A DNA stretch of 63,639 bases, the filler included, from Octopus bimaculoides (taxonomy: Eukaryota): assembly GCF_001194135.2 (NCBI RefSeq). It is 6 parts of 6 records of this genome, joined end to end, with 100 filler letters (N's around TTAATTAATTAA, not from the genome) between each part and the next. Parts side by side here need not be neighbours in the genome. Positions count along the whole stretch, not along the records: positions 37,752 to 57,090 come from NC_069003.1; 5 more parts are not named here. One strand, written 5' to 3'. The notes beneath the pieces were generated by a model. That model was given only the letters and a program-made list of their open reading frames with translations, did no database searches and had not been told where the DNA came from. Below are positions 43,486 through 43,638 of the stretch, one piece after another. The position numbers and the translations under genes were made by a program. Position 1 is the stretch's first letter; every line of letters starts with the position of its first letter.

Positions 43486-43519
43486 ACTTACCTGCAAATA
43501 AGAAGAAAGAACGATTAGT
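43486..43519 (-). promoter_or_regulatory. Candidate recursive splice site (zero-length exon / ratchet point), or donor of an alternative exon
   Basis: Minus strand reads ACTAAT-cgttctttcttcttattt-GCAG|GTAAGT: branch A at -24, 16/18 pyrimidines, CAG directly followed by a consensus donor. Same strand as the Nkx2.1 exon. Confidence 0.55.
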
Positions 43520-43638
43520 TTCGTTGACAACAGTAACGAACGACATTTTTAAATGCGTACATTTCCAACGTACATAATTCGCGCTTTGCTGCCGTCGTCG
43601 AAACTGCTGTTGTTGATAACATTTTCTTTTGATTGCAA

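What the first reader, a model, noticed from the sequence alone, without database searches (positions are those of the whole stretch)
43486..43546. Textbook recursive-splicing-like site on the Nkx2.1 strand, about 36 kb upstream of the homeobox exon
Seen: minus strand ACTAAT (branch A at -24), an 18-nt tract with 16 pyrimidines, then GCAG|GTAAGT, i.e. a complete 3' splice site fused to a perfect 5' splice site. It sits in unique sequence (about 43130-43620). It was the only site of this quality I found by eye outside repeats. Established: AG|GT ratchet points subdivide very long introns in Drosophila, and related sites occur in long vertebrate neural genes. Inference: if Nkx2.1 exon 1 lies beyond the window end, this site would split a >56-kb intron; I am not aware of recursive splicing being described in cephalopods. 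Alternative: it is the donor of a short alternative first exon. ATG at 43546 gives MSFVTVVNETNRSFFLFA+G, phase 1, which joins in frame to the homeobox exon as ...FA-V-SRLMG.
Basis: partly seen in the sequence, partly recalled or inferred. Interest (0 to 1): 0.8.

Follow-up and report, generated by a model that had tools for sequence, protein, structure and literature searches.

The report
Real exon that begins with GTAAGT
The "acceptor fused to donor" motif is real and is the working 3' splice site of a small non-coding exon that begins with GTAAGT, a known exon type that could be spliced out again, but it has no demonstrable link to Nkx2.1 and recursive splicing was not shown.

Summary
The motif is present as described on the minus strand: ACTAAT, an 18-nt tract with 16 pyrimidines, then gCAG|GTAAGT. 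It lies in single-copy DNA. The Nkx2.1 context is void, because the homeobox exon sits on an unrelated piece of the joined window.

RNA contigs from four runs in two sister species match the genome only over 43491→43371 and then continue into unrelated sequence on both sides. The breaks fall at AG| (43493-43492) and |GT (43370-43369). The site is therefore the used acceptor of a 121-nt exon whose first six bases are GTAAGT.

- **Partners:** The exon joins at least three upstream partners in organism A, one more in organism B, and two downstream partners. None of them lies in the 19-kb piece.
- **Coding potential:** The exon has stops in all three frames, and its length differs between species (120, 121 or 122 nt).
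- **Donor strength:** Junctions regenerate CAG|GTAAGT or AAG|GTAAGT, which is stronger than the exon's own donor CAG|GTAATT.

This fits the definition of a putative or expressed RS-exon (Blazquez 2018), a class with thousands of members in mammals. Actual recursive removal could not be tested here.

The parts
43514..43519 (-). Branch-point-like ACTAAT. The branch A is at 43515, 24 nt upstream of the intron's last base.
   Evidence: Read directly. No substitution is listed here in organisms B, C, D or E. Use as a branch point is inferred, not shown.
43496..43513 (-). Polypyrimidine tract cgttctttcttcttattt, with 16 pyrimidines in 18 bases.
   Evidence: Changes in sister species keep or add pyrimidines. 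B has 43499 a>c plus a 1-nt deletion, D a 1-nt deletion plus t>c at 43500, D and E have 43511 t>c, and C and E have an extra T.
43492..43495 (-). The 3' splice site gCAG|, with AG at 43493-43492.
   Evidence: RNA contigs of X19, X20 (two branches) and X25 in organism A stop matching the genome at 43494, 43494/43491 and 43493. X28 in organism B stops at 43496. All then run into unrelated sequence. The X20 branch ending ...ACACTC abuts 43491 exactly.
43371..43491 (-). A 121-nt spliced, non-coding exon.
   Evidence: An X20 contig covers exactly 43491-43371 and then 199 nt of other sequence. X19's 1085-nt contig carries the exon at contig positions 15-138. X25 and X28 carry it too. There are stops in all three frames. 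The length is 122 nt in C and E and 120 nt in B and D. No Rfam match. The RNA fold is no better than shuffles, z = -0.48.
43365..43370 (-). The exon's own 5' splice site CAG|gtaatt. It reads gtaact in organisms B to E.
   Evidence: Contigs of X19, X20 and X28 leave the genome at 43371. The boundaries are canonical GT-AG only on the minus strand. 43366 differs in all four other organisms.
43534..43546 (-). It is not conserved and is not part of the spliced RNA.
   Evidence: In B this stretch is replaced by about 343 nt, and D shows the same break. 43546 is T>C on the plus strand in C, turning ATG into GTG. The spliced RNA contigs of organism A give no cover above 43494.

Best explanation
The motif is the functional 3' splice site of a 121-nt non-coding exon on the minus strand, running 43491 to 43371. 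The exon belongs to an unidentified transcription unit with several isoforms.

The branch-like ACTAAT, the pyrimidine tract and the CAG direct splicing of several alternative upstream exons onto base 43491. The 'perfect donor' GTAAGT is simply the first six bases of the exon. The exon is defined downstream by its own, weaker donor, CAG|GTAATT at 43370, which is spliced to at least two alternative downstream exons. These steps are shown by RNA contigs.

Three of the four observed upstream partners end in CAG or AAG. Those junctions rebuild a consensus 5' splice site, CAG|GTAAGT or AAG|GTAAGT. This meets the published definition of a putative or expressed RS-exon.

Inferred, not shown: in some of the transcripts the rebuilt donor may out-compete the weaker exon donor. 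The exon would then be removed together with the downstream intron, which is recursive splicing and yields a skipped isoform. I put the probability that this happens at an appreciable rate at about 0.35.

The confidence value given here refers to the shown part: a real acceptor plus an expressed exon with RS-exon architecture.
For: 1. Independent RNA contigs carry the exon.
- Organism A: X19 (1085 nt, depth 8.2), X25 (160 nt), and X20 (320 nt plus two branch unitigs at depths 6.1 and 4.9).
- Organism B: X28 (164 nt, depth 17).
- All match only 43371 to 43491-43496 and run on unlike sequence at both ends.
- The breaks coincide with AG| and |GT on the minus strand.

2. In DNA contigs of organism A the region is continuous and single-copy. 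The breaks are therefore not genomic variants.

3. The partner strings are absent from the piece. The flanking introns are thus at least 13.6 kb upstream and at least 5.6 kb downstream, unless a partner exon lies in an assembly gap.

4. The junctions read ...TGTTTCAG|GTAAGT...TTCCAAG|GTAAGT...ACACTC|GTAAGT and, in organism B...CCGTGCAG|GTAAGT.

5. A rough position-weight score gives 8.7 or 8.5 for the rebuilt donor against 4.6 for the exon's own donor. The CTC junction scores 2.4. The weights were recalled from memory.

6. gCAG|GTAAGT and ACTAAT are unchanged in DNA of four related organisms. Tract changes preserve pyrimidines. The exon has 0/121 and 1/121 substitutions in C and E, against about 5% in the flanks (p = 0.005 and 0.04).

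7. The published definition and properties of RS-exons fit: stop-containing, out of frame, with the RS donor stronger than the exon donor (PMC6224609; PMC8605326).
Against: - Contigs are assemblies, not reads. No raw read crossing either junction was seen, and three raw RNA runs (about 6% of each read) gave zero cover over 43122-43630.
- The organism B junction is ambiguous by 5 nt (TGCAG), so it is weaker evidence.
- In B and D the exon is no better conserved than its flanks, at 7/121, with all changes clustered in 43456-43470.
- At about 5% divergence, an intact 8-mer is uninformative on its own.
- The exon is absent from the contigs of most organism A RNA runs listed (share of words 0.00). 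It is either rarely included or the gene is tissue-restricted.
- Unspliced contigs run through both splice sites in organism B: X26 at depth 19 and X27 at depth 9.7. In organism A, X18 runs unspliced through the donor.
- Nothing tests use of the rebuilt donor. All observed RNAs retain the exon even after CAG and AAG partners.
Confidence: 0.85

Rival explanations
1. Ordinary alternative or untranslated-region exon. The GTAAGT at its start is a coincidence and the rebuilt donor is never used, for example because it is repressed after exon-junction-complex deposition. There is no recursion. This shares the shown part of the best explanation and differs only in the inferred part.
For: Every RNA contig seen retains the exon, including those whose junction rebuilds a perfect CAG|GTAAGT. 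Most annotated human RS-exons are constitutively included (PMC6224609).
Against: The rebuilt donor is the consensus and is stronger than the exon's own donor. That is the configuration in which skipping by recursion was induced experimentally (PMC6224609). The exon is absent from most organism A RNA runs, which is compatible with frequent removal.
Confidence: 0.5
2. One reading: a zero-length ratchet point that subdivides a >56-kb Nkx2.1 intron and leaves no trace in mRNA.
For: The motif itself. The flanking introns are long, at least 13.6 kb and at least 5.6 kb.
Against: The Nkx2.1 exon is on an unrelated piece (scan program's note). Spliced RNAs contain a 121-nt exon after the site. The partner exons seen are non-homeobox, partly low-complexity sequence.
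Confidence: 0.02
3. One reading: GT at 43491 is the donor of a short alternative first exon that starts translation at ATG 43546.
For: The ORF MSFVTVVNETNRSFFLFA exists in the sequence.
Against: In organism A no RNA contig covers 43497-43630. In organism B this stretch appears only in unspliced read-through contigs. In neither species does a contig splice from 43492. The sequence downstream of the GT is exonic. The ATG is GTG in C, and an insertion (about 343 nt in B) replaces it in B and D. The longer ORF across the site (43427-43723) reaches no Pfam gathering threshold, and its upstream half is a low-complexity run of valines encoded by the (GTT)n repeat.
Confidence: 0.02
4. A chance motif with no function. 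On this view the contig break points are de Bruijn graph artefacts or individual structural variants.
For: One AGGTAAGT is about what composition predicts (0.55). Logan contigs break at graph branches.
Against: Four runs from two species break at the same two positions, which are a canonical AG and GT on one strand. Both exon boundaries are seen within single contigs in X19, X20 and X28. The DNA contigs are continuous.
Confidence: 0.08

Closest known systems
Expressed or putative RS-exons of vertebrates (Sibley et al. 2015; Blazquez et al. 2018, PMC6224609)
   Same: The exon's junction with the preceding exon rebuilds a strong 5' splice site. It has its own weaker downstream donor. It carries stop codons and its length is not a multiple of three. 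It is flanked by long introns and seen with several alternative upstream exons, one of which (…CTC|) rebuilds only a poor donor.
   Different: Recursion, exon-junction-complex dependence and skipped isoforms are not demonstrated here. The host gene is unknown.
Drosophila intronic ratchet points with cryptic RS-exons (Burnette 2005; Duff 2015; Joseph 2018 and 2021, PMC8605326)
   Same: A pyrimidine tract followed by AG|GTAAGT, a downstream donor that defines a short exon, and poorly constrained, out-of-frame exon content in a long-intron setting.
   Different: Fly ratchet points are almost never seen in mRNA, and their cryptic exons are about 50 nt. Here the exon is 121 nt and is present in spliced RNA. 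No saw-tooth coverage or intermediates are available.
Ubx microexons mI and mII (Hatton et al. 1998, as summarised in PMC8605326)
   Same: Expressed alternative exons that begin with a regenerated donor, so inclusion or skipping can be decided by which donor is used after the first splice.
   Different: The Ubx microexons are 51-nt coding exons in a known gene with validated recursion. This exon is non-coding, its host is unknown and recursion is not validated.

Membership tests
Putative / expressed RS-exon (definition of Blazquez 2018) | The exon-exon junction with the preceding exon reconstitutes a 5' splice site. | tested here: met
   The junctions in RNA contigs read CAG|GTAAGT (X19 and X20), AAG|GTAAGT (X25) and CAG|GTAAGT (X28, organism B). 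One partner gives CTC|GTAAGT. MaxEntScan was not available, so a rough position-weight matrix and a count of matches to the consensus donor CAGGTAAGT (the sequence complementary to U1) were used.
Putative / expressed RS-exon (definition of Blazquez 2018) | The exon is really expressed and is defined by its own downstream 5' splice site. | tested here: met
   Contigs leave the genome at 43371|gtaatt and continue into two different downstream sequences.
Efficiently recursive RS-exon (Sibley 2015) | The rebuilt donor is stronger than the RS-exon's own donor. | tested here: met
   Rough score 8.7 or 8.5 against 4.6. Matches to the consensus donor CAGGTAAGT are 9/9 (CAG junctions) or 8/9 (AAG junction), against 8/9 for the exon's own donor, whose mismatch is at +5. 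The matrix was recalled from memory, so this is indicative only.
Efficiently recursive RS-exon (Sibley 2015) | Second-step splicing from the rebuilt donor actually occurs, shown by intermediates, lariats, saw-tooth coverage, or a skipped isoform that depends on the motif. | not testable with these tools
   Both neighbouring exons lie outside the piece, so skipped junctions cannot be queried. Raw RNA runs gave zero reads at the locus. No total or nascent RNA data were identified.
Zero-length intronic ratchet point (Drosophila type) | A juxtaposed acceptor and donor motif: pyrimidine tract then AG|GTAAGT. | tested here: met
Zero-length intronic ratchet point (Drosophila type) | Not associated with an exon visible in mRNA. 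| tested here: not met
   The 121-nt exon is present in spliced RNA contigs of four runs.
Zero-length intronic ratchet point (Drosophila type) | The acceptor-donor motif is much more conserved than the cryptic exon content. | tested here: inconclusive
   The motif is intact in all five organisms, but divergence is only about 5% and most of the exon is equally intact.
   The flanking introns are at least 13.6 kb and at least 5.6 kb, but the host gene is unknown. The Nkx2.1 link is an artefact of joining pieces (scan program's note).
   No such contig was found: organism A has no RNA cover above 43494, and the organism B contigs over this stretch are unspliced. The ATG is lost in C and the stretch is replaced in B and D.

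The most novel reading that the evidence does not exclude
The site works as a true recursive-splicing switch in a long gene of this (presumed cephalopod) genome. The 121-nt stop-laden exon would first be defined and joined to the upstream exon. It would then usually be removed through the rebuilt consensus donor CAG|GTAAGT. It would survive mainly in minor isoforms, such as those from cryptic upstream exons like ...ACACTC| that rebuild a poor donor. That would be the first documented recursive splice site outside insects and vertebrates in the literature searched.
Probability: 0.3. Interest if true: 0.55.

Novelty: new member of a known kind. Interest (0 to 1): 0.3.

Why it matters
A motif picked out by eye turned out to mark a real, used splice acceptor and a previously unrecognised non-coding exon. 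That is useful for annotation.

The locus gives a concrete and cheap test case for whether splicing of the RS-exon type operates in a lophotrochozoan with very long, repeat-rich introns. Competition between a rebuilt donor and the exon's own donor has so far been documented in flies and vertebrates.

The exon type itself is common in mammals, with thousands of putative RS-exons. Without evidence of the second splicing step, this is an ordinary exon with an interesting first six bases. It is not a new mechanism, and it says nothing about Nkx2.1.

Tried and rejected
Shorter stretches were used instead.
2. Three 2026 raw RNA runs (X24, X29, X30, about 1.9 Gb read from each) had zero reads over 43122-43630. 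No read-level or strand-specific evidence was therefore obtained.
3. All upstream and downstream partner strings were searched for in the piece on both strands. They are absent apart from low-complexity 11-mers, so the neighbouring exons and the host gene could not be located.
4. A protein search used the one open frame that runs from the exon into the next exon, in the hope of retrieving a gene call on the RNA contig. It found no candidates.
5. ORFs of at least 70 aa in the piece are microsatellite or repeat translations. The ORF across the site and a fragment I suspected to be a retrotransposon tail reach no Pfam threshold.
6. An Rfam scan of the whole piece gave only sub-threshold microRNA 'matches' on microsatellites and nothing at the exon.
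7. The exon's RNA fold is no better than shuffles, z = -0.48.
8. The upstream flank 43700-44130 was tested for intronic transcription. 43700-43834 has no cover, and 43835-44120 is a high-copy repeat that is uninformative.
9. The organism's identity was not verified, because run and species names are coded.
10. A literature search for recursive splicing in cephalopods or molluscs returned only an incidental mention.

Full report
**1. The observation**

On the minus strand the sequence reads ...aACTAATcgttctttcttcttatttgCAG|GTAAGTtgaaacg.
- ACTAAT occupies 43519-43514. Its second A, at 43515, lies 24 nt upstream of the last intron base.
- The 18-nt tract 43513-43496 has 16 pyrimidines.
- The AG is at 43493-43492 and GTAAGT is at 43491-43486.

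This is the only AGGTAAGT on either strand of the piece.

The piece is window 37752-57090. It holds 15.5 kb of real bases and ten internal runs of N.

The stretch 43122-43630 is single-copy. One DNA contig of organism A spans it without any difference, in X1 at depth 36.9 and in X7 at depth 10.6. It is bounded by microsatellites, and from 43835 by a very high-copy repeat.

**2. Chance**

Dinucleotide-preserving shuffles of the piece give 0.55 AGGTAAGT on average, against one observed. Only 0.0005 per shuffle also carry a tract with at least 16 of 18 pyrimidines.

The real sequence is rich in low-complexity tracts, and 2.3% of its 18-mers reach 16 pyrimidines. A fair expectation is therefore about 0.012 per piece.

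By extrapolation, sequence of this kind would hold on the order of a thousand or more such motifs per Gb by chance. The motif alone proves nothing.

**3.

The following claims therefore rest on an artificial joining and are void:
- the 'Nkx2.1 strand';
- the 36-kb distance to the homeobox exon;
- the >56-kb intron;
- the in-frame join FA-V-SRLMG.

**4. What RNA shows**

Three deep raw RNA runs of organism A gave no reads over 43122-43630. About 6% of each run, roughly 1.9 Gb, was read.

Assembled contigs of other RNA runs were informative.
- **X19 (organism A):** a 1085-nt contig at depth 8.2 matches the genome only at 43371-43494, which is contig positions 15-138. It runs into unrelated sequence on both sides.
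- **X25 (organism A):** matches 43382-43493 and then diverges.
- **X28 (organism B):** matches 43371-43496 and diverges.
- **X20 (organism A):** holds all sampled words of the exon. One 320-nt contig begins exactly at 43491, ends its match at 43371 and continues for 199 nt of other sequence. Two short branch contigs join 43491 or 43494 to two different upstream sequences, at depths 4.9 and 6.1.

The break points coincide with AG| at 43493-43492 and |GT at 43370-43369, canonical only on the minus strand. The DNA of organism A is continuous across both points.

The best reading is splicing.

Read on the minus strand, the upstream partners are:
- ...ACCGATTGTGCCTGCTTGCCGCTGTTT(CAG), in X19 and X20;
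- ...GAAATTCCA(AG), in X25;
- ...AGGACGCGCATATATGTATACACACTC, in X20, which abuts 43491 exactly;
- ...GGGTCAACCG(TGCAG), in X28 of organism B, where the junction is ambiguous by 5 nt.

The downstream partners are:
- TGTCCCCAAAAGACTCAGCC..., in X19;
- TTTAAAAGCCTGAGTATGGTG..., in X20.

None of these strings occurs in the piece. The neighbouring exons therefore lie at least 13.6 kb upstream and at least 5.6 kb downstream, unless one is hidden in an assembly gap.

**5. Nature of the exon**

- It has stop codons in all three frames.
- Its length is 121 nt in A, 122 nt in C and E, and 120 nt in B and D.
- The 98-aa ORF that crosses the site reaches no Pfam gathering threshold, and its upstream half is a low-complexity run of valines encoded by the (GTT)n repeat at 43636-43692.
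- No Rfam family matches it.
- It folds no better than shuffles, z = -0.48.

It is a non-coding exon. It could be a leader exon, an lncRNA exon or a poison exon, and I cannot say which because the host gene could not be identified. A protein search with the only frame that stays open into the next exon found nothing.

Unspliced RNA also exists. In organism B contigs read straight through both splice sites: X26 at 878 nt and depth 19.2, and X27 at depth 9.7. In organism A, X18 reads through the donor at depth 2.8.

**6. Comparison across related organisms**

DNA contigs of four related organisms (B to E), about 5-6% diverged, cover the locus.
- gCAG|GTAAGT and ACTAAT are unchanged in all four.
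- Changes in the tract keep or add pyrimidines.
- The exon donor is GTAACT in B to E and GTAATT in A.
- The exon has 0/121 substitutions in C and 1/121 in E, against about 5% in the flanks (p = 0.005 and 0.04).
- B and D have 7/121, the same rate as their flanks, and all seven lie within 43456-43470.

Conservation is therefore suggestive for most of the exon. It is not specific to the motif.

**7. Mechanism**

Shown: acceptor use, exon definition by a downstream donor, and several alternative partners on each side.

Because the exon begins with GTAAGT, junctions with partners ending in CAG or AAG rebuild the consensus donor. A rough position-weight score gives 8.7 or 8.5 for the rebuilt donor and 4.6 for the exon's own donor. 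The ...CTC| partner rebuilds a poor donor, scoring 2.4. The matrix was recalled from memory, so the scores are indicative only.

[quoted passage not shown] Several published RS-exon properties are also present (PMC6224609; PMC8605326):
- the rebuilt donor is stronger than the exon donor;
- the exon content carries stop codons and is out of frame;
- the exon sits in a long-intron context.

Whether the rebuilt donor is ever used, which is what recursive splicing proper means, is inference only. All RNAs seen retain the exon, and the skipped junction cannot be queried because both partner exons are outside the piece. I put recursion at an appreciable rate at about 0.3-0.35.

**8. Comparison with known kinds, and novelty**

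This is not a Drosophila-type zero-length ratchet point, because an exon is visible in mRNA. It is a member, by definition, of the putative or expressed RS-exon class. That class is put at more than 6,400 exons in mammals and fewer than 50 in flies (PMC8605326).

The library searches found no paper that reports recursive splicing in a cephalopod or mollusc. I did not verify the organism.

**9. Verdict**

- The sequence observation is correct.
- The genomic context is an artefact of joining pieces.
- Interest is modest. This is a newly recognised non-coding exon of a known type, and a usable test case for recursion in this lineage.

Noticed in passing
window 43835-44120: A very high-copy interspersed repeat, SINE-like. 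Hundreds to over a thousand RNA contigs per run from both organism A and organism B pile onto it, with summed word depths up to about 2x10^5. The adjacent 43700-43834 has none.
   Followed up: partly
window 37802-38216; 41972-42196 and 42304-42528; inverted copies at 48954-49340; also 54708-54859, 56176-56327, 56929-57080: At least eight copies, 70-93% alike, of elements of about 110-225 nt in both orientations. They may be one SINE-like family or two, and one pair is in tandem. The loose end of organism B's unspliced contig, beyond 43582, also matches one of them at 42214-42231.
   Followed up: partly
window 43534-43546 (organisms B and D): These 13 bases are replaced by an insertion (about 343 nt in B, size not measured in D). 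It sits only 19 nt upstream of the branch-like A at 43515, yet the acceptor is still used in organism B (X28). Unspliced RNA is also abundant in organism B.
   Followed up: partly
window 43453-43470 (inside the exon): In organisms B and D, seven substitutions and two 1-nt deletions are packed into 18 nt, while the rest of the exon is identical to A. This could be a small replacement or rearrangement. The cause is unexplained.
   Followed up: no
window gaps 38837-39480, 40968-41476, 42568-43083, 44260-44627, 45867-46794, 51068-51199, 53425-54069: Most internal runs of N abut microsatellites such as (AG)n, (TC)n, (TA)n, (TATC)n and (GT)n. These gaps therefore look like assembly gaps at simple repeats. 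A flanking exon could in principle hide in one.
   Followed up: no
window 40725-40797, 51937-52007 and about 50 other places: The sub-threshold Rfam 'microRNA' matches (mir-297, mir-3149, mir-1277 and others, all far below their gathering scores) appear to fall mainly on (TATG)n, (CA)n and (TA)n simple repeats. They look like low-complexity artefacts rather than genes.
   Followed up: yes
window 43410: All four other organisms have one extra T here. Organism A therefore has a derived 1-nt deletion in the exon. Likewise 43366, at donor position +5, is derived in A.
   Followed up: no
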